A stretch of DNA of 64,000 bases from IMGVR_UViG_3300050120_000361:62001-126000, one strand, 5' to 3'. Positions 9,539-59,407 are shown, counted from the stretch's first letter. Notes: generated from the sequence alone by a model not told the origin. Numbers and translations: made by a program.

Positions 9539-10042
9539 TTATATCTGCGCCGGGTACCATTCGCCCTTGAGCATTACCTCCAGACGCGCCTCTGAAGGCT
9601 TGTTCCAAATGGTGACGTATCCGTTGTTCATTTCGTACCGTCTCTCCCTGCCGTTCAGTTCTGAGGTCACTATGTCCAATACTTCGAAGTAGGTTCCGCG
9701 CTCGTAGTTGAAAGCCCTGAACTTAAGGTCTACGGGCTGTTGCGGCCCCACTTCCCTGTATTCGAGGTTGAATATTATTGCCGGCACGTATTTGGCGTTG
9801 TTCGCGGAAACGACGTAGTAGCCGCCCGCGCTGTAGTTCTTCATTTTGAACTCGTTTTCTGACACATTCACTGTGCCGAAGTTCTTATCCTCGAACTCTA
9901 TGGCTATAACGGGCCGGTTTTCGTCGCGGCGCACGTTCGCTATCTTTAGCGCCCATACCCTGTTAAGGGACAAATAGCTGGGCATTTCAAGCCCGTTTGC
10001 GAACCAGGGCTTTGTGTATTTCGATGAGTCTCCCATAATCAT
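9539..10042 (-). CDS. Conserved phage-type hypothetical protein
   Basis: RVWALKI...GGYYVV...YVPAIIF...Y resembles a widespread small phage domain. Confidence 0.55.
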   Translation of the reverse strand: MIMGDSSKYTKPWFANGLEMPSYLSLNRVWALKIANVRRDENRPVIAIEFEDKNFGTVNVSENEFKMKNYSAGGYYVVSANNAKYVPAIIFNLEYREVGPQQPVDLKFRAFNYERGTYFEVLDIVTSELNGRERRYEMNNGYVTIWNKPSEARLEVMLKGEWYPAQI

Positions 10043-10584
10043 TCGGTTTCAATTGTTTCATAACCAAGGTTCTCTCCACGGAGTATCGCCCATCGTTTGT
10101 CCTCACGCAGGTACGGCCTCTCCACCACCCAGCAATCCATGAATTGTTCCATCAAATGGTCCGCATCCCGTAGTATAACCATTTCCTTGCGGCGCGGGTC
10201 GAGATAGTGCAGCACGTTACCAAGTTTGAGAATTCCCACCGCATGAAACATGGACGGTATCAGGCGCACGGTTAGGTGATATGGTACTATAGGGGTTTCG
10301 ACGAACAGTTCTCCTGGCGCCTCTTCCATCATCACCACGTTCCATATGTGCTCTTTTGGCAATGGTGGGTATGCAGGATTGGATTGAGTTACAAGTCCCA
10401 TTTTCAGTTCGGGAACGCTCATCAATAGCATAGCTTCCACGCGGGTCTCGTCACAGGCCTTGTAATTTGGGTCTTCGCACAGCCTCAACAGATTTTTATC
10501 CTTGAGAATGTTGGCCAACAAGTACACGGTGCACCAGCCTATGGAAGGCTGAACGTATGGTACTTCAAGTTTCAGATGCCTCAC
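10039..10584 (-). CDS. Putative papain-fold cysteine peptidase (C39-like/Josephin-like)
   Basis: LEVPYVQPSIGWC (Gln, then Cys at a helix start), FHAVGI (His), YLDP (Asp). Confidence 0.55.
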   Translation of the reverse strand: MRHLKLEVPYVQPSIGWCTVYLLANILKDKNLLRLCEDPNYKACDETRVEAMLLMSVPELKMGLVTQSNPAYPPLPKEHIWNVVMMEEAPGELFVETPIVPYHLTVRLIPSMFHAVGILKLGNVLHYLDPRRKEMVILRDADHLMEQFMDCWVVERPYLREDKRWAILRGENLGYETIETE

Positions 10585-19728: not shown

Positions 19729-21036
19729 TTATGCGTTTAGTATGTCGTCTATGAATGATCTTTCCGTTACCTGCTGGTTCTGCTGGCCGGGAGCCGCGGC
19801 CTTTATCGATGGTGCCGACGAGGCTATGAGCTCCGTGGCGGAGTCAACAGTGTTCACTGAGAAGTTGAGCCTGAGCAGGTCCTGCATGCTCAGCGGCGCG
19901 AGAACCTGCTCCTTTATTGTAATCCAATGGGACTCGAACGCCTGTACCACGTGTTCCGGCAGGTACTCCTTGCGGAGCATTATTATCTTCAGGTTGTGCT
20001 TGTAATGGTTGCCGACCGACTTCTTGTCTATGGGGTCCGGCGTCTCGCCCTGGGCCTTTGCTATCAGGTTTATGAGAGTGCTCAGCTGCATGTCCTTGTC
20101 GAGGAAGAACCTCTGCGCGGTCTCTTCGCTGAGCGGCCCGTACTTCAGCTTGGCCCAAACGGCCTCAATCATCTTCTCGGTTATCTTGAAGTTCTTGCCG
20201 CCCTTCTTCCACCTGAGTATGGGGAACACGTTGTCCTTCTTGTCGCCGCATATAGTCTTGCATAGGCCGGTAAGCAGGGGCTCGGCCACCTGTATTCCCT
20301 GGCCCGGGACGCGGTTCATGTTTGAGCGCTGCCTTCCGCCGTTCAGCTGCACGCGGAACGTCCTGTCGAAATGCGTTCTGTCCTCACTGGTCTGCGTCAT
20401 CCTCGCGAGCATGTCCATAGGCTGGTCGTTTGCGAACAGCTTCTTGTATATTCCGGCCGATATGTAGAACTCGCCCTCGGGGTTCGCCTTGGAGCTTATG
20501 TTCTTGAACAGCCTAACGCGGTTGTTAACAATCTGCGACAAATCGCCGTCGCTCGCGAACATCCAAAGGTTTATGTTGTTAGCCGAGAGCTTGTCTCCGA
20601 GAAGCAGCAGTGCGTCGTCGCCTTCGCAGCCCGTGACCCTGAAGCAGGGGACGTGCGGGGCTATTCTGCCATGGAATTCCTCCATCAGCCTGTCGAACTC
20701 ATCCCAATTTATGTCAGACTCCTCCTTTATAGCAGTGCGGTTGTCCTTGTAGTTTATCGGCTCCTCGGACCCTTCAGGCAGGTAGTAGGGCCTGTAGCCT
20801 GGAATGTCCTTACGCCATGAGTGGTTGTCGAAAACGAACACAAGCCCGTCCATTAGCGTGTGGTACTCGTTATTGAACGAGGCGTATATGGATAGGAGGC
20901 TCTCGTTCAGCGCGGCCGCGAAGTTCGCGTGGTCCTGCATGCTGTTCAGCGTTATCTCGGGCTGCTTCGAACGCATGCCGTGCAGCATCCTGTGGCCGAA
21001 GTAATTCCCGTCTATGCCAAGGTAGTTTCTCTCCAT
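19729..21036 (-). CDS. 5'-3' exonuclease / T4-type RNase H (FEN family)
   Basis: GIDGN, VFD..SWRK, YKDNR, EGDD, SDGDLSQ, ICGDKKDNV. Confidence 0.9.
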   Translation of the reverse strand: MERNYLGIDGNYFGHRMLHGMRSKQPEITLNSMQDHANFAAALNESLLSIYASFNNEYHTLMDGLVFVFDNHSWRKDIPGYRPYYLPEGSEEPINYKDNRTAIKEESDINWDEFDRLMEEFHGRIAPHVPCFRVTGCEGDDALLLLGDKLSANNINLWMFASDGDLSQIVNNRVRLFKNISSKANPEGEFYISAGIYKKLFANDQPMDMLARMTQTSEDRTHFDRTFRVQLNGGRQRSNMNRVPGQGIQVAEPLLTGLCKTICGDKKDNVFPILRWKKGGKNFKITEKMIEAVWAKLKYGPLSEETAQRFFLDKDMQLSTLINLIAKAQGETPDPIDKKSVGNHYKHNLKIIMLRKEYLPEHVVQAFESHWITIKEQVLAPLSMQDLLRLNFSVNTVDSATELIASSAPSIKAAAPGQQNQQVTERSFIDDILNA

Positions 21037-24649: not shown

Positions 24650-25591
24650 TTATCTGAATATCGAGCGCAGTGCCGAAATGCACGCGAAGAATGTGCCGAA
24701 CTTGTTTATGGTGGTCACGTACCTGAACGAGTAGTCGCAGACTATCGCGGCAGCCTTCATGGTGTGCTCGTACTTGCCCTGGCTGTTAAGCCATGTGAAG
24801 TACGGCTCTCCAAGGGATATTAGACACTCGCGCTCCTTGCCCTTGTAGGCGCTCACGGCCTCGTAGAACTTCTGCGCCTCGGCGTTGGACTGTATCAGCT
24901 CGTAGAGCTCCACGTTGGCCGTTCCGTTTTCGGACAGTATAACCACATTGTCCTCGGTAACGTCCCGCTTGCTGTCTATGAATTGCTGCAGTATCACGAG
25001 CAAGTGCCTGAAGTCCGGAAAGTTCATCTGGTATATGAGCTTCAGGCCGCGGTTGTCATACCTGATGTTGTTCTCGTTGCATATGCGTACGGCGTACGAT
25101 ATGTACTTCTTCTGCTGCTCGGTTATCTCCTGGCCCTGGTAAGAGTACTCAACGTTCACGCAGCGCGACTTTATGGCGGAGTTGACGGTTTCTGGCTCGT
25201 TGGTGTTGAACACGAAGTTCACGCTCTTGGCGGTGTCCAGCACGACCTTGAAACCGTCCTGTATCTTGTTGGCAACGTTCTCGCACTCGTCAACGATGAG
25301 GGACTTCTGCCTGCCGAGCACTGAGTGCCCTGACACGAATGGGTACACCTTCTGGCGCATCACCTCCACGTTGAAGTCGTTCGAACCGGACAGGTACAGA
25401 ACGTCGTGCCCGAGCGTAAGGAGCTTGGCCGTGGATGTCTTGCCGGTTCCGGGAGGCCCGTGCTGGAAAAGCCGCCACCCCCTCGCGTCCGTTGTTGTGT
25501 TGGTCAGGAGGGTCTCTATCCTGTTTGGCAGGTAGAGGTCTTTGAGGGATTTCGGGGAATATATCTCAAGCAGTGTCTTCTTTTCGCTCAT
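24650..25591 (-). CDS. Sliding clamp loader AAA+ subunit (T4 gp44/RFC-like)
   Basis: LEIYSPKSL, HGPPGTGKTS, IVDECE, NTN, IKSRC, FPDFRH. Confidence 0.92.
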   Translation of the reverse strand: MSEKKTLLEIYSPKSLKDLYLPNRIETLLTNTTTDARGWRLFQHGPPGTGKTSTAKLLTLGHDVLYLSGSNDFNVEVMRQKVYPFVSGHSVLGRQKSLIVDECENVANKIQDGFKVVLDTAKSVNFVFNTNEPETVNSAIKSRCVNVEYSYQGQEITEQQKKYISYAVRICNENNIRYDNRGLKLIYQMNFPDFRHLLVILQQFIDSKRDVTEDNVVILSENGTANVELYELIQSNAEAQKFYEAVSAYKGKERECLISLGEPYFTWLNSQGKYEHTMKAAAIVCDYSFRYVTTINKFGTFFACISALRSIFR

Positions 25592-25866: not shown

Positions 25867-26769
25867 TTATGATTTGCCTTTGTTCAATTCGTCAAAGGAC
25901 TTGCTCATTATGTTCTTTACCTTGTTCTCAAACTGCTTTAGGAACTGGGCTGAATTGCGCTCAAAGGCCTGGTTCATCTGCTCGTCAATGTGCTGCACCT
26001 TTTCCGAAAGGACCTTCTGCACCAGCTCATTTGCCATCGCCTCATCGACAACAGGCTCCTTCATGCGCAGCTCAATGAGTTCAGCCTGAAACTGCTCCAC
26101 GAGCGGCTTTAGCACGGTTTCTATATTCTCTTCGGAAGGCTCCCACCTGACGTTCAGCTCCTCATTGCTTTTGAAGAAACGCTCATTGTCCATGTTGCCC
26201 ATCCCGTGCTCCGGCCAGAACTTGTTAGGCAGCTCATCGGATGGGTCCTTGTGCAGGTCGTCGGAAACCAATGCGGAACGGTCGTGCTCTATGTCAATAA
26301 TCCAATCTTTTGCTCTTATGTGACTGGCGTACAACTTTATGGTTATGGGTATCATTACTGATATGAGCATCGCGAAGCCAAAGTCAAAATAACCAACAAG
26401 GTTCGGCTGCTTGCCAAGGGCCATGGGGTCAATCATTATGTGTCGCGCGTAGTAGTAGACGTTTATGACTATCTCAACGAAAGTGAACATCGTAACGGCT
26501 CGGTGTATTCTGCGGGCGGCGTCAGAGTCCTCATCGTCGGAAATCGCAACAAAGAAAAGGAGGGATGAGCTTATGAAGATTGAAAGGAGTGTCGCCTGGA
26601 CCGTGCGCCAACCGCCCTCGAGCGAGGATATTGAATTAACCAGGAAATACGTGTGCGACACCTGGGCCACGGTTCCAGTGATACAGTACATAAACGCCCA
26701 TTCGCGTGAAGTAAGTATTGCCACCACAAACCTTATTGCGGCCTTTATTCCTAATATCGCTTTTTTCAT
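25867..26769 (-). CDS. Multi-pass membrane protein with C-terminal coiled coil
   Basis: About four hydrophobic segments in the N-terminal half; E/Q/K-rich helical tail. Confidence 0.7.
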   Translation of the reverse strand: MKKAILGIKAAIRFVVAILTSREWAFMYCITGTVAQVSHTYFLVNSISSLEGGWRTVQATLLSIFISSSLLFFVAISDDEDSDAARRIHRAVTMFTFVEIVINVYYYARHIMIDPMALGKQPNLVGYFDFGFAMLISVMIPITIKLYASHIRAKDWIIDIEHDRSALVSDDLHKDPSDELPNKFWPEHGMGNMDNERFFKSNEELNVRWEPSEENIETVLKPLVEQFQAELIELRMKEPVVDEAMANELVQKVLSEKVQHIDEQMNQAFERNSAQFLKQFENKVKNIMSKSFDELNKGKS

Positions 26770-33478: not shown

Positions 33479-34759
33479 TTAAGAATTAAGGATGTCCTCA
33501 ACATCCGGAGACTTTTGCGTTATCTCAGCGCTTGTAGCCGGTGCCTCAGCCGCTGGAGCGGATTGTACGGGCGCCTCAGCCGCTGGCGGCGCCTGTTGGG
33601 TTTGGGCTGCAGGTGGCGGCGTTGGCGCCTGAACTGGTGATGCTCCTGCCGCGAGCACGGAGTCAACGAGCTCGGTTGGCGCGGAGTTCTTCAGGATGTC
33701 CTGCGCCGAAGCGCCTGAAAGCGTGGTGGCGCTGTCGCTTCCCTCGGTCGAGCCTGTGGCGACCGTGCCGTAGGACTTGATTTCCTGGATGGAGGTGGCG
33801 TTCAGGATAACCGGAATTATCTCGTCAATCTTCAAAGCCAAGTCGATAAGGTACTTGTTGGTGTCCTCAGTGTTCTTAGGGTCGTTCAACGCCTTGTAGG
33901 CGAAGTAGTTGTGGATTGAAAGCTCGGGCTTGGTCATGTTGGCGATGAGGGCGCTGAAGAAGTCGTCAAGCCCATCAGCCAATGAGCCGTCGGCGTTCTT
34001 GTCGGCCTGCGTGAAGGTGTGCTCCCTGCCGTCCTCCAACTTCACGTAAGCGCCGCGAATGTTCTTCGTGAAGGCGGACTTCGTGAAGTCGCGCCCCTTG
34101 CGGCCGTCGTAGTCGGCCTCGTCGCATTGGATGAAAAGCGCGCTCGAGCCGAACGAGTCAAAGATGTCCTCCTTCTCAAACCCCTGCTTCTGCTTGGCCT
34201 CGGACGGGTTCAGCTTCTCATCAATCAGGTTGGCGATTGTCGCGTTTGGTCCGAATGTCGAGAAGGTGAAGAGTCGGATGATGCCTATCTCAGCGGCATC
34301 ATCCGACTCAAGCACCTGTACCACTGAACAGCCCTGATTTGTAACGCTCAAAAAGTCGTCGATTTTCTGTATGGCCAGGGCGTCGCCGTTCTTTTTCAGA
34401 GCGTGGAGCTGGAAGAACGCGTCGAGAACCTTGTCGGTTTTCGCGTTGTTTGATGAAACTGATTGGAATGTCTTGCCGCGGCGGGTAGGGTCTGGAAGGT
34501 TCTTGTATACCTTGCGGTGTATGATGTCATTGTTGCCCGCAAGGGTGGTTGACTCCAGGTTGCGGAGCAATTTGACCGTGTAGGATTTGCCTACCTGGGG
34601 TTCAAAGAAGATTAGGGAGTAGTCCATTCCACCACCAAGAGGAATATCCTCCGCCTTAACGGCCTGTGAAACGTCTGTTTTTGTTGTGAGCATGGCGGCC
34701 TTCAAGGCGTCCATGTTGTTTGCGGCTGGTTGCTGCGTGGTCGAATTCTGATCTGACAT
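33479..34759 (-). CDS. Single-stranded DNA-binding protein (T4 gp32-like)
   Basis: IRLFTFSTFG...LIDEKLNP...EDIFD..G...DFTKSAF; long A/P/Q-rich linker and acidic tail; A-rich leader and a downstream terminator, as expected for a highly expressed gene. Confidence 0.7.
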   Translation of the reverse strand: MSDQNSTTQQPAANNMDALKAAMLTTKTDVSQAVKAEDIPLGGGMDYSLIFFEPQVGKSYTVKLLRNLESTTLAGNNDIIHRKVYKNLPDPTRRGKTFQSVSSNNAKTDKVLDAFFQLHALKKNGDALAIQKIDDFLSVTNQGCSVVQVLESDDAAEIGIIRLFTFSTFGPNATIANLIDEKLNPSEAKQKQGFEKEDIFDSFGSSALFIQCDEADYDGRKGRDFTKSAFTKNIRGAYVKLEDGREHTFTQADKNADGSLADGLDDFFSALIANMTKPELSIHNYFAYKALNDPKNTEDTNKYLIDLALKIDEIIPVILNATSIQEIKSYGTVATGSTEGSDSATTLSGASAQDILKNSAPTELVDSVLAAGASPVQAPTPPPAAQTQQAPPAAEAPVQSAPAAEAPATSAEITQKSPDVEDILNS

Positions 34760-34849: not shown

Positions 34850-35734
34850 CTATAGGGTGGTCGGCATTTGCTTGATAGGGTCAAATCCCAATTGCTGCAC
34901 AATGTAGTCGTATGTCCTTATGCGGGCGGCCACCAGGTCCTTTGTTTCGGTAGGCAGGTTTGGCATCCAGAAGCATTCCACATGCAGCGCGTTTGAGGAG
35001 TCCCTGTAAACCATAACCTTCCAGTACACGTCAGGAACCGTTACGGTGTTCCTGCCGTCAGTGTAGGTTGTCGGCTTAACCTTTGCGTCTTTGGCGTACT
35101 TGGCAGGGTCCACCCAGGTACCGGCCCATATGTCTATGCGTGCCGTAACCGCTATTATTTCTCCAGACCTTGACCAACCAGTAAGCATCCTGCACCTGTC
35201 CTCCGTGGCTATCTCGGTTCCGACGTTCTGCCCCTGGTACTGCATAGCGGCGTTGTAGTCGTAAACGTCAGAATAGACCATGCCCCATTGGCACCACGCT
35301 AGCAGTACCCATGCGGCGCCGCAGTGCCCGTAAGCTATTTCGTAGGGCGAGTCGGGCCTGTTTATGATCCTGTTCGCAGCCGAGTAGACCGCAGTCACGT
35401 CCCTCGCGGCTGTCACGTGGTGCCACTCCGACTCAGGGCCCTTGCGGTTTCCTGTGCCGAGAGCCTGCTGCATCAGCCTGTGCTGCTTCGTATACACGTA
35501 GTGCTCCAGCAAGGGCATGTGCCTCACGGTGTCCGCAATAGATGAGTAGTACGGGTTCACCCACAGGCGGCAGGCCGGGCACAGGTCAGATTTCCTGGTA
35601 GGGTATTTGGCGAACTCGGCCTGTATGTCCTTGGCCGTAAGCACTGGGAACTTGGACTGGCCGTCAGCTTCGTACATCAGCAGCGAAAGCGCGAGCGCCG
35701 CCATAAAGCATAGAATGACATTGGGGTTTTTCAT
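34850..35734 (-). CDS. Secreted DNA/RNA non-specific endonuclease (His-Me finger, NucA/EndoG-like)
   Basis: Signal peptide MKNPNVILCFMAALALSLLMYEADG/Q; AYGHCGAA (His), NAAMQYQGQNVG (metal-binding Asn), VTVPDVYWKVMV, FWMPN. Confidence 0.75.
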   Translation of the reverse strand: MKNPNVILCFMAALALSLLMYEADGQSKFPVLTAKDIQAEFAKYPTRKSDLCPACRLWVNPYYSSIADTVRHMPLLEHYVYTKQHRLMQQALGTGNRKGPESEWHHVTAARDVTAVYSAANRIINRPDSPYEIAYGHCGAAWVLLAWCQWGMVYSDVYDYNAAMQYQGQNVGTEIATEDRCRMLTGWSRSGEIIAVTARIDIWAGTWVDPAKYAKDAKVKPTTYTDGRNTVTVPDVYWKVMVYRDSSNALHVECFWMPNLPTETKDLVAARIRTYDYIVQQLGFDPIKQMPTTL

Positions 35735-38317: not shown

Positions 38318-39157
38318 TTATATGATTATTATCGGTATGTTAAGCTTTGCCGGCTGCTTCTTCTTTTTCTTCTTTTTGGCGTCATTCGCCATCGCAGCCT
38401 CGAGCCTGACCTCCTTCTTCTTCTGCGAGGTCGTCATCCTGCGCTCCTGCGTGGTGTGGAGCCTCCAGTGGCAATTCAGCATGAGGGCGAAGGAGTCCAC
38501 CACGTCATTGACCTTGGCGAGCGACATGGTGTCCGGAAGCAGGGCCGCGCCGCCGAAGGTAACCAGGAACGCGTCCAGCATTTCCTGCTTGTCAGCGTCC
38601 CCGTACCCCGAGAAGAACAGCTTAAGTTCGGAAGGCGAGGTTATGGTTATCCTAAGCGAAGCCCGCCCGTTAAGCGTTATCTTCAACTTTATGAGCTCGG
38701 AGCGCAGCATGCCCTGAAGCATTATAAGGCCTCCGAGCACCCTGAGCTGCATCTGGCCAGCCATAGAAGGCATCACGAAACCCTCGATATTGAACTGGAT
38801 GTCATAGGGGCCGAACCCCCACTGCTCGCCGCTGGCCGTCACGGGGCACCCGCACCTGACAAGCTGCTCGAAAACTATCTGCATTATGCGCTTCACGCAC
38901 ACCATGGCCTTAAGGGTTATGTGCGCCTGGTCCTCGCTGTAGAAGTCGTCTTCCCCTACGGTCTGTATCAGGTCGGTGACGTCAACGTTAGATGGCATGC
39001 GGTAGGTCTGCTGGTTTATGTTCCTTATTGGGTCTGGAACCTTATCGAACACGAGCCTGTGGAAGGCCATGTCTGTGCACCTGCCGTCGTCCCAGCAGGC
39101 GGTGGTTATTCCAGTGGAGTTAAATGAGAGGTCAATTCCAAATACTATTCTTTTCAT
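38318..39157 (-). CDS. ruvC: RuvC-like Holliday junction resolvase
   Basis: FGIDLSFNSTG, NIEG, SPSELKLFFSGYGDADKQEM, NDVVDSF; poly-Lys tail. Confidence 0.82.
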   Translation of the reverse strand: MKRIVFGIDLSFNSTGITTACWDDGRCTDMAFHRLVFDKVPDPIRNINQQTYRMPSNVDVTDLIQTVGEDDFYSEDQAHITLKAMVCVKRIMQIVFEQLVRCGCPVTASGEQWGFGPYDIQFNIEGFVMPSMAGQMQLRVLGGLIMLQGMLRSELIKLKITLNGRASLRITITSPSELKLFFSGYGDADKQEMLDAFLVTFGGAALLPDTMSLAKVNDVVDSFALMLNCHWRLHTTQERRMTTSQKKKEVRLEAAMANDAKKKKKKKQPAKLNIPIIII

Positions 39158-52603: not shown

Positions 52604-55600
52604 ATGACGCTCAGAACCAAGCACAGAAGTGACGAAGTAGGCCAGGTAGACGAAAGGCTCGCCATAAGCGTACAGCTTGGAATACCCACCTATACTGCCG
52701 ACCCAACTCCGTCTCCAACGGACGCCGAGGGCGGCTACGCCAACACCCCAATCTACTGGAACACCGCTCTCGGCTCGCTTCGCCTGAACCCGGGAGGGCT
52801 GGGCTGGCAGTCACTGGGCGCCGTTTCGCCCGGGTCGGGCATAGACATAACCTCGGGGATAGCCTCATTGGGCGCCCCGGTCACAAGGGACACGGACCTT
52901 GACGGCGTGCACAAGACGCGCATCGGGGACATCACCGGCGGCAAGTCCTACGTGTCCATAGACCCGGCGAATTCTCAGGCAGTGCTGCAGTCGCTTTCGG
53001 GCGGAGTTTCAGCGTTTTCAGGCGCGTACGGCGGAAACGCCCAGATGGGCGTTTCGCAGCCAGGGGCCCACTCCTACGTTTACGTGGACCCGTCCCAAAT
53101 GGTGGTATCGGACACGATAAACAGCAGGGGCCTGATAAACGGAGGCGACTATGAGGCGAACTTTGTCGCGAGGTCGCTCGTTACATACCAGTGGGCCAGC
53201 GCTCAGAACGCCCTTTACATGCCAAAGACCGGCGGCACGTTCACTGGCGACGTTCAGATAACAACCCCGCCTGTCAACGGGACCTCGGCGATAAACAAGA
53301 ACTACGCCGACAGCATAGCCATGGGCGTCGTGTGGATAGGCGCCGACACCGACTCCGGAAGCAACGTGACGCTCTCTGGCGAGCAGGTGCTTTCCGGGTA
53401 CCTTACGTCCAACTCGCGCGCGTTCCTTCACGGGCAGACCAACGCCGCCAATAACGGCGTTTGGCTGACGAGCGGAGGCGCGTGGACGAGAACATCCGAC
53501 GCCTCGACGCCTTCCCAGCTCGTGAGGTGCGCGGTCATAATAGACGCGGGTAACAATGCGGGTCAGACCTGGTTAAACACCAATTCCTCAATAGTTCTTG
53601 GCACCACGGCCATAACGTTCACGCGCGCGGGCGGGCTTAACTACATCAACGGCACGGGCATAGCGATAGCCGCTTCGACAATATCTCTTGACCTCACGTA
53701 TACTGACGCGAGATACGCATTGAACTCTTGGGGCATTCAGTCCTTCACAACATCAGGCAGCAGCGGCACGCCTACGTTCTCGGGCGGCACATTGAATGTG
53801 CCAGCCTATACCCTCACAGGTCTCGGCGGACAGGCCGCACTGGTTTCGGGAACCAACATAAAGAACATAAACTCCGCGTCACTGCTCGGCGGAGGTAACA
53901 TTGCGCTGCAGACGCCATTGGTTGCGGGAACGGACTATTTGACACCCACGGGGTCCGCTGCTGGATTGGTTTCATTCCCGACATTCAACCAGAACACAAC
54001 CGGCAACTCTGCCACCTCTACAAAGCTTGCGACAGGCCGCAGCATACAGGGAGTGCTTTTCGACGGAACGTCGGACATTAGCATCCTGAACGGTACCGGC
54101 CTTGTGCGCATGGCCGGCACCTCCATATCCTACGACAATTCAACATACATTACCTCGGCAGGCGCTGACGGCCTTTACCTGCCACTGCACGGGACCGCGG
54201 ACAACTCCGCGCTGTGGAACGGCCTGGCGTACTACGGCGGCGGCCTCGTTGCATCGGTGCTCTACGCGATGGCCTACGACGGGACCAATAACAGGCAGGG
54301 GCCCGCTAACGCCGCGCAGATGCAGGGATGGCTCGGGCTCGGCTCCGCGGCGTACCTGAACGCATCTGCCTCCGCCGCCGCCAACGCGGTTGTGCAGCGG
54401 GACGGCTCGGGATACATAAACAACACATACATACTCACCACTGACGACTCTTCTTCCGCACTGGGGTACATGGTTGGCAAGTCTCCATCGGACAACTACC
54501 ACAGGACGTACGCGGTCGGCACGGTTCAGTCATGGCTGGGCCTTGGCGCGAGGGCGTACGACTCCGCGGCATACCTTCCGCTTCACGCCGAAGCAGACAA
54601 CTCGGCCCTGTGGAACGGCAACAGCTACACCCCTGTGTCTTACAGCGGGGCCCTCCAATACATTCTCGGATACGACCAGTCGGCTTCCACTTGGAAACCC
54701 TCCACTGCGGCCTCCATTTCCTATTTCCTTGGGCTCGGGTCCAACGCCTTCGACTCCGCCGCGTACCTTCCGCTGCACTCGACGGCTGATGCGGCTACGC
54801 TTTGGGGCGGGCAGCAGGCAAACCTTTCAACGACGGTGTCATCGATAGCCAATATGGTGGCCCAGCAGCCAGGCGGCTCTGTTGCGGTGGCCTCATTGGG
54901 TCAGGTCCAGGGATGGCTGGGACTCGGCTCTAACGCCTACAATTCGACAGCCTACCTGCCGCTTCACGCAAAGGCAGACAGTTCGGCAACCGCCGACATG
55001 GGGTACGCGATGGCTGTACAGGACTTTGACAGGCCGATGTCCGTTGTTACCCCCAACTTCAACGGCGGCCACCAGATGCGTTTGGACTTTGTGAACTCTG
55101 CCGTGATAGGCGGTGCAACCGGCAACTTCGGCGGCGTGGTCACGCTCATTCCCTACGACGGTAACACCGCATCGACCGGCGACGCGTCATACCAGCTCGG
55201 TTTCGTGGGGACCGGGGCAAACGGCTCAGGAACGCCGCGCATGGTCATCCGCAAGGGGATAGACGCGACATGGAACGGGTGGCATGAAATGCTCACGGAC
55301 TCCAACTACAGCTCGTACTCCCCTACACTCACAGGCGGCGGAGCATCTGGCGTTTGGGGTATTAGCGTGACTGGAAACGCGGCAACCGCGAACTCAGCCA
55401 CAACGGCGGGCAGCGCCGGGAACTCCACGCTCTGGAACGGGTACGACAACCAGTTCGCGAGCGGCGTGAGGTCGGACATAGCGCCATCATCTATTAACGG
55501 CTTCTACTCCAACGGGCACGTGTACCAGTTCGCGGCGAACCAGGTGCAGTCATTCCTCGGGCTCGGAACCGCGGCCTACCTCAACGCTACTACTGCCGGA

Positions 55601-58600
55601 AATTCGGGGGCCGGGGCTAACCAGGTTGTCAGGTACGATGGCAGCGGATACATTCAGGCCTACTACATAAATTCGGACTCTCCATCCAGTGAGGGCGGGC
55701 CCATAGGGCAGTTCGTGACCACCAACGGCTCAGACAACTACTACAGACGCCAGAGCTTATCGGCGGTGGCCTCGACAATAGCCACAGCGATAGGCCTTGG
55801 AGGATACCTGCCTCTTTCCGGCGGTACCCTGACTGGGGCCCTGAGCGGCACCACTGCAAATTTCAACGCCAATGTGAACATAATACAGCAGGGAAGCGAC
55901 ACCATAGGCGTAGGCTCGTACATGCAGATTGGGCGCTCGGACTCGGGAATAAGCGCCGGAGTTGTCACGCAACTGAGCTCAGCATACAACATGGATTGGT
56001 GGACCCTGGCCAACGGAGGCGGCTGGACGCGTAGGATGACGCTTGCCAACAACGGCTCAGGGCTGTCGCTCACGGCCGGCTCATACAACGGCGTGCCCTT
56101 TCAGGCGAATGACATAACTGGAGTGCAGAACGCGCCTTTCTGGGCGGGCTCACTGGCAAATCCGGGAAGCGGCCAGCAGACTTTCATGCCTGTAATAGGC
56201 CAATACTCCGTTGTCTCGGGAGTCGGAGGCGCGCACTACATGTCCATTGGCACATGGCGCTCAGGAAATTCTGGATATACCGGGGCCGTTTACATAGCGC
56301 CTGGCGGTGGTTCGGACTCCTATTCAACGGATTACTTCCTGCTCTCGCACGGTGGCGCTATAACGCACAGCTCTGGAACCACCTTCCTGAATTCAGTCAA
56401 TTATGGCACGTGGGCTCTTCCGCTCTCGGCTGGTGCTTCATACCCTTTGACGAACACCCTTTACCTTTCAACAACCGAGGGCGCGCGCACCGTTTCGGAT
56501 GCAGGATACCTGTCATTCTACAATTCTGCTGACTCCTCAAGGACAGGGTACATTCAATTCAACGCCGGCAGCGGCGTGTACATAGCTGCAGAGAACGCCA
56601 CAAGCATAAACCTGCAGGGCGCCCCGGTGGCGATTAACAACACATTGACTGTAACGGTCAACGGCGCAGTGAACCCGCTCCACGTGGTCAACAACATATC
56701 ATCTGGATACACGGGCACCATGCTGTGGGGTCAGGTCGCGCAGGCCACTGGAACCGCTTTCGACCTCATAGGGCTCTACACCTCGACGAACACGCAGAGG
56801 CAGTTCAGCGTTAGCGGCGCGGGCCAGATGAGGCTTGACGGCGCGATGTACGGTACAAGCGCATACCACCAGCTAAACAGGAACGCCCTGACCACTGAGA
56901 ACATGTTCGTCTGGCGCACTGCAGGTACAGAGAAGTGGTATTTCGGCCAGCGCAACAAGAACTCTGAGGATGGGCTGTCGCTTTACAACACGGCGTACGG
57001 CGACGACAACATGTACTTCCACCCGAACGGGACTGTTGACTTTTCCGGCAATCTGAACTTTTCTACCTGGAACGGGCTGACCTACGCGGCCACGAGCTCG
57101 CCGAACAATATAGTGCAGTACAACGGTAGCGGCTACATATTCGCGAACTATTTCAACACGCCATCGGGTGGCGGGGAGCGAAACGCCAGCGGGCTCGGAT
57201 ACGTGGCCGGCTTCAACAGCTCGGACACCTATATCAGGTCCTACAACTCCTCCGCGGTAGCTGGAATGTTGGGGCTGGGCACCGCGGCATACAGCGACAA
57301 GACGCAGCTCTGGTCGGTGTCGCACCCGACCGCCTACTACATCTCGAACACCTGGGACGGAACCTACTGGCAGCTGACGTCCAACCACCCGGCAGCGGTG
57401 AACGTGGGGCACGCGACGAACGCAGACCACGCCACGTCTGCCGCGTACGCGGCCTACCTCCCGACCAACTACATCGGAGGGGTGCAGACGAACCCGCAGA
57501 CCTACTTCGGGAACGGGGCCGGCCTGCAGGTGGCGATGACGGGTTCGGTCGCCACATGGTCCGACACCCTCTGGATAAACGGGTACGCCGGAGGGGACGT
57601 GCCGAACATGGTGGCCATGCACTTCCTCAGGAACGGCACGCCGCGCGCGTTCCTTAGCACGCAGCAGAGCACCGCAACGGCATACGGGTCTTACTACGAG
57701 TTCCTTACAGAATACAACTGGAACAACTACGCGCCATCGCTGACCGGCGCAGGGGCGTCCGGCTCCTGGGGCATCAACATTACCGGTTCTTCGATATATT
57801 CAGGTTCTTCTGGCTACTCACAATATGTTGATTTATTGGCGGGTAGAACTGACGCAGCTTCTTATCCCGTACTGTGGGGCGTATCGCAGGGCACAAATCC
57901 GCACACGGGAAATCCAGGCACTTTCGCCTTCTCCTGCGCCGCGGTTACGATAAACTCGAGCACGGGAACCCTAAGCGCCACCAACCTCAGCGCCTCAAAC
58001 TCAATAGGCGTGGCCGGCAGCCCTGGCTCGACACTCGGCTACTACGCCAACGGGCAGCTCTTCGGTGGGTGGGAGGTGTTGGCGGGCTACTACATCGACC
58101 CGTCTAACGGCGCCTACAGGGCCCCAAACGGCGCGGCTCTGGCCGGGTACTATTTCCAAACATACAATGGCGCGGCCACGCAGCTATACGTGGGCCTTAC
58201 CGGAACCTACGCCGGCAGGGTCGGGATAGGCACAACCACGCCGGGGTACAACCTGGACGCCGGTACGGGAAATATAGGGGCCGGCGGCTTCTACTCATCG
58301 GCTTCCCAGTCGTCCATATGGGGTTACGGCTCGAGCGGCACGGGCTCGGGATACAGCACCTCTGACTGGGGCGTTTGGTCCGCGAGGTCCGGCGGCCCGA
58401 CGCTCGGCTTCCACTACCAGGGGGTCGTGGCCTCCACCATAGGCATAGAGGCCAGCGGGCGCATAGCCATCAGGAACAATCCCGGAACGGGTTACGAAAA
58501 CTTCATAGCCAATAATATACAGGCTGCATCAGCTTTGCAAGCAGATAGGGTTTTCGCGGGTTATGACAGCGGTGTGAGCGGCTCTGTTAGCGCTTCCGGC

Positions 58601-59407
58601 TGGTTCAGGTGCTCCGGCCCGACCGGGCTGTACAACGCCTCGTACGCCGTGGGGATTTACGCCGGGGACGCCTCCACAATGCACCTGTACGGCTCGAGCG
58701 GCTCGTCTTTCGGATTGAAGATGTCCTACAACGGGGAAAGCTCCACCACTGGGTACCTTTACGGGGACTCCTCTGGTTTCGGACTGCTCACCACTTCTGG
58801 CGGATGGGGACTCAGGATGACTGGAGGCGGGGACGTTCAGGCAATGTCCTCGGTATCCGCGCCTGTGGTGTACTCAACCTCGGACGGCTTCCACAGCCAA
58901 TCGGTTAAGGGCATTGCCGGAAACTACGTGGCGCAGGGGAACACGCAAATGATTATATGGACAATTGGGGACAGTTGGAACACTCTCGCCAACATGTACG
59001 GCCTCACCTACACGTACGGCGCTACCTTCTCTGACCATGAAATCTCAATAGCAGAGGCTGGGACAGTGAACATATCATTCGCCATGGGAGGCAGGGGGTG
59101 GTTCCGCAACGACGTCACAGCATCGGCCTTCTACCAGTCGTCCTCCCGCTCGCTGAAGACCGCCATAAGGGATACCCGAATAAACGCATTGGACCTGGTG
59201 CGAGGGCTCCGCGTCAGGGACTACGTGTACAGGGAGCGCCCTTCGGAGAGGCGCGTGGGCGTGATAGCCGAGGAGGCGCCCAGGGAGTTCCTCAGCCAGG
59301 CGGGCGACTCGGTCAACCTCCAGGACTCTCTGATGATAGCCCTGAAGGCCATACAGGAATTGAACGCTAAAGTGGAGGACCTTCAATGCCGACTTGGGCA
59401 GGCCTGA
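52604..59407 (+). CDS. Long tail fibre (2267 aa) with C-terminal peptidase S74 intramolecular chaperone
   Basis: G/S/A/T/N-rich; GQTNAANNGVW...AWTR, LVSGTNIKNIN, YLPLSGGTLTG, GRVGIGTTTP, SGWFR..G.TG.YN; C-terminal SSRSLKTAI...GVIAEE...LKAIQEL coiled coil. Confidence 0.9.
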   Translation: MTLRTKHRSDEVGQVDERLAISVQLGIPTYTADPTPSPTDAEGGYANTPIYWNTALGSLRLNPGGLGWQSLGAVSPGSGIDITSGIASLGAPVTRDTDLDGVHKTRIGDITGGKSYVSIDPANSQAVLQSLSGGVSAFSGAYGGNAQMGVSQPGAHSYVYVDPSQMVVSDTINSRGLINGGDYEANFVARSLVTYQWASAQNALYMPKTGGTFTGDVQITTPPVNGTSAINKNYADSIAMGVVWIGADTDSGSNVTLSGEQVLSGYLTSNSRAFLHGQTNAANNGVWLTSGGAWTRTSDASTPSQLVRCAVIIDAGNNAGQTWLNTNSSIVLGTTAITFTRAGGLNYINGTGIAIAASTISLDLTYTDARYALNSWGIQSFTTSGSSGTPTFSGGTLNVPAYTLTGLGGQAALVSGTNIKNINSASLLGGGNIALQTPLVAGTDYLTPTGSAAGLVSFPTFNQNTTGNSATSTKLATGRSIQGVLFDGTSDISILNGTGLVRMAGTSISYDNSTYITSAGADGLYLPLHGTADNSALWNGLAYYGGGLVASVLYAMAYDGTNNRQGPANAAQMQGWLGLGSAAYLNASASAAANAVVQRDGSGYINNTYILTTDDSSSALGYMVGKSPSDNYHRTYAVGTVQSWLGLGARAYDSAAYLPLHAEADNSALWNGNSYTPVSYSGALQYILGYDQSASTWKPSTAASISYFLGLGSNAFDSAAYLPLHSTADAATLWGGQQANLSTTVSSIANMVAQQPGGSVAVASLGQVQGWLGLGSNAYNSTAYLPLHAKADSSATADMGYAMAVQDFDRPMSVVTPNFNGGHQMRLDFVNSAVIGGATGNFGGVVTLIPYDGNTASTGDASYQLGFVGTGANGSGTPRMVIRKGIDATWNGWHEMLTDSNYSSYSPTLTGGGASGVWGISVTGNAATANSATTAGSAGNSTLWNGYDNQFASGVRSDIAPSSINGFYSNGHVYQFAANQVQSFLGLGTAAYLNATTAGNSGAGANQVVRYDGSGYIQAYYINSDSPSSEGGPIGQFVTTNGSDNYYRRQSLSAVASTIATAIGLGGYLPLSGGTLTGALSGTTANFNANVNIIQQGSDTIGVGSYMQIGRSDSGISAGVVTQLSSAYNMDWWTLANGGGWTRRMTLANNGSGLSLTAGSYNGVPFQANDITGVQNAPFWAGSLANPGSGQQTFMPVIGQYSVVSGVGGAHYMSIGTWRSGNSGYTGAVYIAPGGGSDSYSTDYFLLSHGGAITHSSGTTFLNSVNYGTWALPLSAGASYPLTNTLYLSTTEGARTVSDAGYLSFYNSADSSRTGYIQFNAGSGVYIAAENATSINLQGAPVAINNTLTVTVNGAVNPLHVVNNISSGYTGTMLWGQVAQATGTAFDLIGLYTSTNTQRQFSVSGAGQMRLDGAMYGTSAYHQLNRNALTTENMFVWRTAGTEKWYFGQRNKNSEDGLSLYNTAYGDDNMYFHPNGTVDFSGNLNFSTWNGLTYAATSSPNNIVQYNGSGYIFANYFNTPSGGGERNASGLGYVAGFNSSDTYIRSYNSSAVAGMLGLGTAAYSDKTQLWSVSHPTAYYISNTWDGTYWQLTSNHPAAVNVGHATNADHATSAAYAAYLPTNYIGGVQTNPQTYFGNGAGLQVAMTGSVATWSDTLWINGYAGGDVPNMVAMHFLRNGTPRAFLSTQQSTATAYGSYYEFLTEYNWNNYAPSLTGAGASGSWGINITGSSIYSGSSGYSQYVDLLAGRTDAASYPVLWGVSQGTNPHTGNPGTFAFSCAAVTINSSTGTLSATNLSASNSIGVAGSPGSTLGYYANGQLFGGWEVLAGYYIDPSNGAYRAPNGAALAGYYFQTYNGAATQLYVGLTGTYAGRVGIGTTTPGYNLDAGTGNIGAGGFYSSASQSSIWGYGSSGTGSGYSTSDWGVWSARSGGPTLGFHYQGVVASTIGIEASGRIAIRNNPGTGYENFIANNIQAASALQADRVFAGYDSGVSGSVSASGWFRCSGPTGLYNASYAVGIYAGDASTMHLYGSSGSSFGLKMSYNGESSTTGYLYGDSSGFGLLTTSGGWGLRMTGGGDVQAMSSVSAPVVYSTSDGFHSQSVKGIAGNYVAQGNTQMIIWTIGDSWNTLANMYGLTYTYGATFSDHEISIAEAGTVNISFAMGGRGWFRNDVTASAFYQSSSRSLKTAIRDTRINALDLVRGLRVRDYVYRERPSERRVGVIAEEAPREFLSQAGDSVNLQDSLMIALKAIQELNAKVEDLQCRLGQA
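54170..57300 (+). repeat. Degenerate protein-level repeats within the tail fibre
   Basis: LGLGxxA(Y/F) six times, YLPLHxxAD four times, V(Q/R)x(D/N)GSGYI...SD(N/T)YxR three times. Confidence 0.8.

What the first reader, a model, noticed from the sequence alone, without database searches (positions are those of the whole stretch)
19729..19800. RNase H and the gp32-like SSB end in the same motif (DDILNA / EDILNS)
Seen: the 5'-exonuclease ends ...AAAPGQQNQQVTERSFIDDILNA*, and the SSB (33479) ends ...AEAPATSAEITQKSPDVEDILNS*. Both tails follow flexible A/P/Q-rich linkers. Known: T4 gp32 uses an acidic DDLLN-like tail for partner binding. Inference: a shared docking peptide lets the primer-removal nuclease mimic the SSB tail and compete for the same replisome site; I do not recognise this hand-off mechanism as described.
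Basis: partly seen in the sequence, partly recalled or inferred. Interest (0 to 1): 0.6.

Follow-up and report, generated by a model that had tools for sequence, protein, structure and literature searches.

The report
SSB and nuclease share docking tails
In this giant phage and more than a hundred relatives, the protein that coats single-stranded DNA and the nuclease that removes primers carry the same two short peptide motifs on their floppy C-terminal ends. The motifs change together from phage to phage, so both proteins probably plug into one common site of the replication machine, which is still unidentified.

Summary
The 435-aa ORF (window 19729-21036, minus) is a FEN/T4-RNase-H-type 5' nuclease. 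The 426-aa ORF (33479-34759, minus) is a gp32-type SSB by predicted fold only, with no family match. Both end in [DE]DILN[SA]. No other ORF of the 208.5-kb genome does (0 of 5000 shuffles).

Relatives from metagenomes (90 SSB, 31 nuclease) largely keep this tail. They also reveal a second shared motif upstream (two hydrophobics, x, x, Ser, hydrophobic, Pro) that is more widely conserved. Some distant nucleases end right after it.

Within a genome the SSB and nuclease versions of this motif resemble each other more than across genomes (permutation p about 2e-4). Identical residues mostly use different codons, so selection acts on the peptide rather than through recent gene conversion. In cultured Sphingomonas phage PAU both proteins end in a different word, FDELGI, which is coded nowhere else in that genome.

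Best reading: bipartite docking motifs for one common receptor. The receptor is not identified; one complex prediction against the SSB body gave no answer. The nearest precedents are the T4 gp32 A domain and the interchangeable T7 gp2.5/gp4 tails. I rate it a new variant of a known kind, of moderate interest.

The parts
19729..21036 (-). Gene for a 435-aa FEN-family 5'-3' exonuclease / flap endonuclease, the functional analogue of T4 RNase H (P0001)
   Evidence: Pfam PF02739 scores 38.4 bits against a cut-off of 34.3. phrog_107 exonuclease, E 8e-19. AF2 model pLDDT 85. Foldseek hits T5 FEN 5hml at E 1e-10 and T4 RNase H 1tfr/3h8j at TM about 0.68. Acidic residues D9, D70, E138, D140, D141, D163, D165, D265 and D268 are invariant in 26 sequences.
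19810..19845 (-). Nuclease motif 1 (aa 398-409): a short helix ending in Ser-Ala-Pro, placed just after the folded body
   Evidence: Helix 399-407 in the AF2 model with pLDDT about 50. S407 is at least 90% conserved in alignment A2. The motif co-varies with SSB motif 1.
19759..19809 (-). Nuclease linker (aa 410-426), rich in A/P/Q and variable in length and sequence among relatives
   Evidence: pLDDT below 50. The linker is absent or 0-25 residues long in relatives.
19732..19758 (-). Nuclease motif 2 (aa 427-435), the C-terminal word ending DDILNA
   Evidence: Predicted helix 428-433. Kept in 15 of 32 family members as D[ILV]L[NG]x0-3 at the end.
33479..34759 (-). Gene for a 426-aa gp32-type single-stranded-DNA-binding protein (P0002)
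   Evidence: No Pfam or PHROG hit. In the AF2 model with a 32-row alignment the core has pLDDT above 90. Foldseek top hits are T4 gp32 core 1gpc (E 3.8e-7, TM by target 0.71), RB69 gp32 2a1k, and gp32-Dda 8gme.
33653..33706 (-). SSB motif 1 (aa 352-369): a short helix followed by Ser-Ala-Pro-x-Glu-Leu, about 20 residues after the core
   Evidence: P361 and E363 are invariant, and S359, L364 and S367 are at least 90% conserved in A1. Helix 352-359. Found in 86 of 90 family members.
33509..33652 (-). SSB linker 2 (aa 370-417), rich in A/P/Q/T and hypervariable
   Evidence: pLDDT below 50. Its length ranges from about 20 to 70 residues in relatives.
33482..33508 (-). SSB motif 2 (aa 418-426), the C-terminal word ending EDILNS; counterpart of the LDDLLNDL end of T4 gp32
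   Evidence: An IL-x end is found in 72 of 90 relatives. T4 gp32 end read from NC_000866.
34688..34714 (-). Conserved N-terminal helix of the SSB (aa 16-24), the likely counterpart of the gp32 B (cooperativity) region
   Evidence: Helix 12-24 in the model. Conserved D-A-L..A-F-L pattern in A1. Its function is inferred by position only.

Best explanation
The SSB and the primer-removing 5' nuclease each carry the same two short linear motifs on a disordered C-terminal extension. Motif 1 is a short amphipathic helix ending in Ser-hydrophobic-Pro. Motif 2 is an acidic-hydrophobic word at the very C-terminus.

I read these as docking peptides for one and the same receptor surface in the phage replication machinery. 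On this reading the nuclease is recruited to, or competes for, the place that SSB tails occupy.

Shown:
- the sharing of the motifs;
- their conservation;
- their restriction to these two proteins;
- their within-genome co-variation;
- their maintenance at protein level rather than DNA level.

Inferred: that they bind something, and what that is. My ranking of the receptor, given that the general reading holds:
- The SSB body itself, about 0.3. The nuclease would then sit next to the last SSB at the 5' end of the previous Okazaki fragment. This is the job done in T4 by contact between the RNase H C-domain and the gp32 core.
- The split family-B polymerase, about 0.25. This would be a T7-like arrangement in which the polymerase strips SSBs by their tails and then meets the nuclease as the 'last SSB'.
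- The clamp or clamp loader, about 0.15.
- A helicase-primase or an unknown protein, the rest.
For: - Only these two ORFs of the genome carry the terminal word.
- Motif 1 lies in the last 110 aa of 86/90 SSB relatives and, by the same pattern, 22/32 nuclease relatives. Motif 2 is kept in most SSBs and about half of the nucleases.
- Over 17 genome pairs, the SSB and nuclease motif-1 windows of the same genome share 79 identities against 61.7 +/- 4.3 for shuffled pairings, p 1.5e-4. With only the 12 pairs verified on one IMG/VR record, p is about 8e-4. In G002, for example, both proteins have an unusual Asn in place of Ser and the same following five residues.
- Phage PAU uses another terminal word, FDELGI, on both proteins. 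The first five residues (FDELG) are coded only twice in 219 kb.
- Identical residues use different codons. In G002, 11 residues are identical but only 2 share a codon, so the peptide is under selection.
- In whole-genome scans of four relatives (150-178 kb), no other ORF has motif 1 plausibly placed near its end or has the terminal word.
- Both tails are predicted disordered with two short helices at the motifs.
- Established knowledge fits. The T4 gp32 A domain is a partner-recruiting tail with a helix at 248-270 and an acidic tip (PMC11551737). The T7 gp2.5 tail and the gp4 tail use the same polymerase patch (PMC12339929).
Against: - No binding partner was found. The one complex prediction (SSB 12-340 with nuclease 392-435) scored 0.00, which the tool says is no evidence either way.
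- In T7 and T4 the nuclease is a client of the SSB (tail or core) and does not carry an SSB-like tail, so no direct precedent fixes the mechanism (PMC4124056, PMC3012046).
- A hub receptor with only two clients is unusual.
- In four relatives (G001-G004) the nuclease lacks motif 2 although the SSB keeps it, so the two motifs need not have the same partner.
- The genome pairs are phylogenetically related, so the permutation p-values overstate independence. I count about five independent co-variation events.
- More distant jumbo phages (PTm1, MA9V-1) show no shared tail.
Confidence: 0.6

Rival explanations
1. The motifs are sliding-clamp-binding peptides (PIP-like). The nuclease would use them as FEN1 uses its C-terminal PIP box, and the SSB would also be tethered to the clamp.
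For: A clamp loader is encoded between the two genes (phrog_168, E 8e-38), so a clamp should exist. [quoted passage not shown] T4 gp33 ends in such a word. This nuclease begins directly with its first strand and has no N-terminal clamp motif like that of T4 RNase H.
Against: The canonical PIP consensus (Gln, then an aliphatic residue, then two aromatics) is not met. No clamp gene was recognised (PF09116 and PF02916 give no match). A 325-aa protein encoded between the polymerase pieces carries a different, conserved acidic-aromatic tail that looks more like a clamp-binding word. No other likely clamp client carries the motifs. I know of no SSB that binds a clamp directly.
Confidence: 0.15
2. 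Each tail folds back on its own protein's DNA-binding surface as an autoinhibitory flap. The likeness would then reflect similar physical requirements, not a shared partner.
For: Fold-back of the acidic tip is proposed for T4 gp32 (discussion of PMC11551737), and the AlphaFold2-predicted gp2.5 structure has its tail in the positive binding groove (PMC12339929). Both tails here are net acidic: 11 acidic against 2 basic residues, and 5 against 2.
Against: The two folded bodies are unrelated (OB fold versus FEN fold), yet the hydrophobic and Ser/Pro positions co-vary within genomes and PAU changes the word in both proteins. Independent self-binding does not predict that. The conserved positions are mostly hydrophobic, not acidic.
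Confidence: 0.1
3. The motifs are a common regulatory signal, such as a degradation tag or a signal for localisation to a replication compartment, rather than a replisome docking site.
For: They are terminal, disordered and short, as degrons and targeting signals are. They are restricted to two proteins that must be present in a set ratio.
Against: Motif 1 is internal in the SSB. The SSB tip matches in position and character the partner-binding A domain of T4 gp32 (PMC11551737). No other phage protein carries the motifs, which is odd for a general targeting signal.
Confidence: 0.05
4. The likeness comes from chance, low-complexity composition, or a recent recombination between the two genes, with no functional meaning.
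For: The words are short, and the surrounding linkers are low-complexity.
Against: 0 of 5000 shuffles reproduce the strict terminal word twice. The motifs are conserved down to about 35-40% identity in both families. Codons differ at identical residues. PAU shares a different word between the same two proteins.
Confidence: 0.02

Closest known systems
T4 gp32 C-terminal A domain
   Same: It sits on the same kind of protein: the SSB core here matches the gp32 fold. Both tails are disordered, acidic and bipartite, with an upstream helix and a terminal acidic-hydrophobic word. T4 ends LDDLLNDL and this SSB ends EDILNS. In T4 the helix 248-270 binds Dda and the tip is thought to act on the ssDNA site (PMC11551737).
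   Different: The upstream helices share no sequence likeness. The T4-type zinc ligands are absent here, since no Cys or His is invariant at those places. Above all, T4 RNase H does not carry the gp32 tail. It binds the gp32 core through its folded C-domain and the clamp through an N-terminal motif (PMC3012046).
T7 gp2.5 (SSB) and gp4 (helicase-primase) acidic C-terminal tails
   Same: An SSB and a second replisome enzyme carry like C-terminal tails that dock on the same surface of a third protein. That surface is the front basic patch of the polymerase, and the gp4 tail peptide in PDB 6P7E was used to place the gp2.5 tail (PMC12339929). This is the closest precedent for the logic proposed here.
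   Different: The second protein in T7 is the helicase-primase, not the 5' nuclease. The T7 nuclease gp6 is instead stimulated through the gp2.5 tail (PMC4124056). The T7 tails are acidic with a terminal Phe and are not bipartite. The receptor here is unknown.
Bacterial SSB C-terminal tip (SSB-Ct) as an interaction hub
   Same: A conserved terminal peptide follows a disordered linker and recruits genome-maintenance enzymes (general knowledge, not tested here).
   Different: In bacteria the nucleases (ExoI, RecJ, RNase HI) are receptors of the tip. Here the nuclease carries the tip-like peptide itself.
FEN1 C-terminal PIP box / T4 RNase H N-terminal clamp motif
   Same: A FEN-fold nuclease has a short docking peptide on an unstructured end (PMC3012046).
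   Different: The PIP consensus is not met, and the same peptide sits on the SSB, which is not a known clamp client. No clamp was identified here.

Membership tests
gp32-type phage SSB | OB-fold core superposable on T4/RB69 gp32 | tested here: met
   In the AF2 model the core has pLDDT above 90. Foldseek hits 1gpc at E 3.8e-7 with TM by target 0.71, plus 2a1k and 8gme, all with probability 1.00.
gp32-type phage SSB | Sequence-family match (Pfam or PHROG model of gp32) | tested here: not met
   No Pfam or PHROG family at E up to 0.1 or 0.01. tblastn against 50,697 phage records found nothing. Membership rests on fold only.
gp32-type phage SSB | Structural zinc site (His plus three Cys in T4) | tested here: not met
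   No invariant Cys in the 32-row alignment; only H81 is nearly invariant.
gp32-type phage SSB | N-terminal cooperativity region and acidic C-terminal partner-binding region | tested here: inconclusive
   A conserved N-terminal helix (aa 12-24) and an acidic disordered tail with a T4-like terminal word are present. Their functions were not tested.
FEN / 5'-3' exonuclease family (T4 RNase H, T5 D15) | N-terminal resolvase-like nuclease domain above the curated threshold | tested here: met
   PF02739 scores 38.4 bits against a cut-off of 34.3. phrog_107, E 8e-19.
FEN / 5'-3' exonuclease family (T4 RNase H, T5 D15) | Whole fold and the cluster of metal-binding carboxylates | tested here: met
   Foldseek hits T5 FEN at E 1e-10 and T4 RNase H at TM by target 0.65-0.69. 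D9, D70, E138, D140, D141, D163, D165, D265 and D268 are invariant.
FEN / 5'-3' exonuclease family (T4 RNase H, T5 D15) | 5' exonuclease / flap endonuclease activity, primer removal | not testable with these tools
   Needs an enzyme assay.
SSB-tail-type short linear docking motif | Short conserved peptide in a disordered terminal region | tested here: met
   pLDDT is below 50 around the motifs, with short helices at both motifs. Conservation across families.
SSB-tail-type short linear docking motif | Co-evolution of carriers that share a receptor | tested here: met
   Permutation p 1.5e-4 for 17 pairs and about 8e-4 for 12 verified pairs. PAU shares a different word between the two proteins. 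Codons are not shared.
SSB-tail-type short linear docking motif | Demonstrated binding to a partner | tested here: inconclusive
   The complex prediction with the SSB body scored 0.00, which the tool reports as 'no answer'. No other partner could be tested.
PIP-box / clamp-binding motif | Consensus Gln-x-x-aliphatic-x-x-aromatic-aromatic | tested here: not met
   Neither motif has the Gln or the aromatic pair.
PIP-box / clamp-binding motif | A sliding clamp encoded by the phage | tested here: inconclusive
   A clamp loader is present, but PF09116 and PF02916 find no clamp. The gene at the T4 gene-45 position encodes a membrane-like protein.

The most novel reading that the evidence does not exclude
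The nuclease has taken over the SSB's own A-domain-like tail and so behaves as the terminal 'pseudo-subunit' of the SSB array. Whatever reads SSB tails (neighbouring SSB or the advancing polymerase) would then automatically find the nuclease at the 5' end of the previous Okazaki fragment. This would be a clamp-independent hand-off for primer removal that is not described for T4, T7 or cellular replisomes.
Probability: 0.25. Interest if true: 0.7.

Novelty: new variant of a known kind. Interest (0 to 1): 0.5.

Why it matters
How the primer-removing nuclease is brought to each Okazaki fragment differs between model systems. In eukaryotes and archaea it is a PIP box on the clamp. In T4 it is contact with the gp32 core. 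In T7 and E. coli it is the SSB tail acting as bait. Here the nuclease itself wears the SSB's tail, in a large and mostly uncultured clade of jumbo phages.

If the common receptor is found, that would give a fourth solution and a clean natural example of motif sharing and co-evolution between replisome parts. One cultured member, phage PAU, makes it testable. The work also gives a first functional annotation (gp32-type SSB) to a protein family of at least 90 clusters that has no Pfam or PHROG model.

Tried and rejected
- Complex prediction of SSB 12-340 with nuclease 392-435 scored 0.00. The tool's verdict is 'no answer', so I do not use it as evidence either way.
- Search for the sliding clamp. 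Pfam PF09116 and PF02916 gave no match in the genome. Two candidate ORFs (300 aa and 252 aa) gave nothing against PDB sequences. The Atlas search of the 300-aa ORF gave nothing usable. Its five-genome alignment looks like a membrane protein, so I rejected it as a clamp.
- No Dda-like (PF13604) or DnaB-like (PF03796) helicase was found, so a T4-style gp32-Dda contact could not be pursued.
- megablast of the region and tblastn of the SSB against the phage collection gave no match. The nuclease hit only PAU and one metagenomic phage at about 24% identity.
- PTm1, pT24 and MA9V-1 were checked for shared tails and none is visible, so the feature does not extend to that part of the clade.
- The Atlas search of the 497-aa protein with a similar tail gave no usable hit.
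I repeated the test from the stored files (timed out, 41 succeeded).
- Four of the 17 genome pairs (contigs of 52,515, 35,289, 153,561 and 140,287 bp) are paired only by equal contig length in the search tables. The 196,506-bp pair was verified, and a test on the 12 IMG/VR-verified pairs alone is also significant.

Full report
**Observation**

The window lies at 62001-126000 of a single 208,538-bp virus record with direct terminal repeats and 52.9% G+C. On the minus strand, ORF 19729-21036 (435 aa) ends in the word ending DDILNA.

In all six frames of the whole genome these are the only two ORFs with such an end. Shuffling the last 60 residues of all 229 gene calls gave two or more loose matches in 0.44% of 5000 trials, and the strict word never appeared.

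**What the two proteins are**

The 435-aa protein is a FEN-family 5' nuclease.
- It passes the Pfam 5_3_exonuc_N threshold and matches phrog_107.
- Its AlphaFold2 model has pLDDT 85 and is folded to about residue 395.
- The model matches T5 flap endonuclease and T4 RNase H.
- The carboxylates typical of the family are invariant in 26 relatives.

The 426-aa protein has no Pfam or PHROG match and no tblastn match among 50,697 phage records. Its model has a core pLDDT above 90, and the best PDB matches are the cores of T4 and RB69 gp32 with probability 1.00. So 'gp32-like SSB' holds by fold. The T4 zinc ligands are missing.

**Context**

The phage belongs with Sphingomonas phage PAU, the Tenacibaculum phages PTm1/pT24 and Chryseobacterium phage MA9V, judged by its large terminase.

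Genes around the two ORFs:
- a split topoisomerase II;
- the terminase;
- a dNMP kinase;
- a clamp-loader subunit;
- a UvsW-like helicase directly downstream of the SSB gene;
- a non-specific endonuclease;
- a RuvC-like resolvase.

The family-B polymerase is split into several genes outside the window. The order SSB, helicase, five unknown genes, clamp loader, kinase, nuclease is kept in four relatives of 150-178 kb and in a 196.5-kb contig.

**Conservation, and a second motif**

Word-based searches found 90 clusters related to the SSB (39-75% identity) and 31 related to the nuclease (32-76%). Most SSBs end in a variant of the same word. An Ile-Leu-x end occurs in 72 of 90, and 15 of 32 nucleases keep the D[ILV]L[NG] end.

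Upstream of the variable linker, both families have a second short motif: two hydrophobic residues, two variable ones, then Ser-hydrophobic-Pro.
- In the SSB this motif continues with x-Glu-Leu, and its Pro and Glu are invariant.
- In the nuclease the Ser is at least 90% conserved.
- Both motifs are predicted as short helices in otherwise disordered tails.
- The more distant nucleases end right after motif 1, or have motifs 1 and 2 fused without a linker.

Motif 1 is therefore the older and more general shared element.

**Co-variation**

I paired the SSB and the nuclease of the same genome in 17 non-redundant cases.
- Twelve pairs are on one IMG/VR record.
- One pair was verified on a JGI contig.
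- Four pairs were inferred from equal contig length.

The ten-residue windows ending at the Pro share 79 identities in true pairs against 61.7 +/- 4.3 in shuffled pairings (p 1.5e-4). The result holds for the variable positions alone (p 2e-4) and for the 12 verified pairs (p about 8e-4). Examples:
- One genome replaces the Ser by Asn in both proteins.
- One genome has the same six preceding residues in both proteins.
- Three genomes have an aromatic residue at the same place in both.

The pairs are related, so I count about five independent events, not seventeen.

The clearest case is the cultured phage PAU. Its SSB and its nuclease gp83 both end in another word, FDELGI. The degenerate DNA pattern for its first five residues (FDELG) occurs exactly twice in 219 kb, at those two ends.

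At the DNA level identical residues mostly use different codons, for example 2 of 11 in one genome. The likeness is therefore kept by selection on the peptide, not by recent gene conversion.

**Exclusivity and limits**

In the five complete or near-complete genomes, a few other gene calls match the loose motif-1 pattern, but none looks like a true carrier. None but the SSB (and, in this genome, the nuclease) has the terminal word. In PTm1, pT24 and MA9V-1 the tails of the two proteins are not alike.

**Comparison with known systems**

T4 gp32 ends LDDLLNDL. Its A domain is now seen as bipartite: a helix at 248-270 binds Dda, and an acidic tip may act on the ssDNA site (PMC11551737). The SSB tail here has the same layout.

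T4 RNase H has no such tail. It touches the gp32 core with its folded C-domain and the clamp with an N-terminal motif, while FEN1 enzymes use a C-terminal PIP box (PMC3012046).

In T7 the nuclease gp6 is stimulated through the gp2.5 tail (PMC4124056). The tails of gp2.5 and of the helicase-primase gp4 use the same basic patch of the polymerase (PMC12339929).

So shared tails between an SSB and another replisome enzyme are known. A nuclease that wears the SSB's tail was not found in the papers I could search.

**Mechanism**

The best-supported reading is that both tails dock on one common receptor (confidence about 0.6). Which receptor is inference.
- The restriction to two carriers and the T4 precedent favour the SSB body.
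- The T7 precedent favours the polymerase.
- The FEN1 precedent favours a clamp, but no clamp was recognised, and a different conserved acidic-aromatic tail sits on a protein encoded among the polymerase pieces.

The one complex prediction allowed (SSB body with the nuclease tail) gave no answer and is not used.

Rivals, and why each fits worse:
- Independent autoinhibitory flaps do not explain the co-variation across two unrelated folds.
- A common degradation or targeting signal does not fit the gp32-like position of the tail.
- Chance or recombination is contradicted by the conservation and the codon data.

**Verdict**

I rate it a new variant of a known kind and of moderate interest, testable in phage PAU.

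Noticed in passing
L007:1959-3449 (+), i.e. genome 167959-169452, outside the window: A 497-aa protein of unknown function ends in an acidic low-complexity stretch followed by a word much like motif 2 (ending QDILANL). Its orthologues in four relatives keep an acidic-hydrophobic end of the same rhythm. It has no Pfam, PHROG or Atlas lead. It could be a third carrier of a related tail.
   Followed up: partly
L007:10466-11440 (+), genome 176466-177443: A 325-aa protein encoded between the exonuclease and palm pieces of the polymerase has a conserved C-terminal acidic word ending in an aromatic residue in all five genomes. It is a candidate clamp-binding tail of the polymerase.
   Followed up: partly
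L007:7942-9471 and L007:11486-12754 (+): The family-B DNA polymerase is split. The exonuclease domain (PF03104, E 2.6e-11) and a weak palm match (PF00136 and divergent PolB) lie in separate genes, with two other genes between them.
   Followed up: partly
window 24650-25591 (-) and the whole genome: A clamp-loader large subunit is present (phrog_168), but no sliding clamp is recognisable by Pfam. The gene two upstream of the clamp loader (past an 88-aa ORF), roughly where T4 has gene 45 (window 25867-26769), encodes a conserved membrane-like protein instead.
   Followed up: partly
window 33479-34759 (-), alignment A1: This SSB family of at least 90 clusters has the gp32 fold without the T4 zinc ligands. 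It has a strongly conserved basic stretch around L88-P89-D90-P91-x-R93-x-G95-K96. No Pfam or PHROG model covers the family.
   Followed up: partly
window 10039-10584 (-): A 181-aa ORF next to the topoisomerase gene has an internal word resembling motif 1 (hydrophobic pair, x, x, Ser-Val-Pro-Glu-Leu) at residue 52. It has no orthologue in at least three of the four relatives, so this is probably chance.
   Followed up: no
window 52604-59407 (+) and 62888 to beyond the window end: Two giant ORFs of 2267 and 3040 aa lie in the late region. They were not examined.
   Followed up: no
window 34850-35734 (-) and 38318-39157 (-): A non-specific DNA/RNA endonuclease (PF01223, E 2.8e-9) lies directly upstream of the SSB gene, and a RuvC-like resolvase (phrog_159) lies nearby.
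   Followed up: no
relatives G001-G004 and G000: G+C content ranges from 30.7% to 52.9% among phages that keep the same gene order in the replication module. This points to hosts of very different base composition.
   Followed up: no
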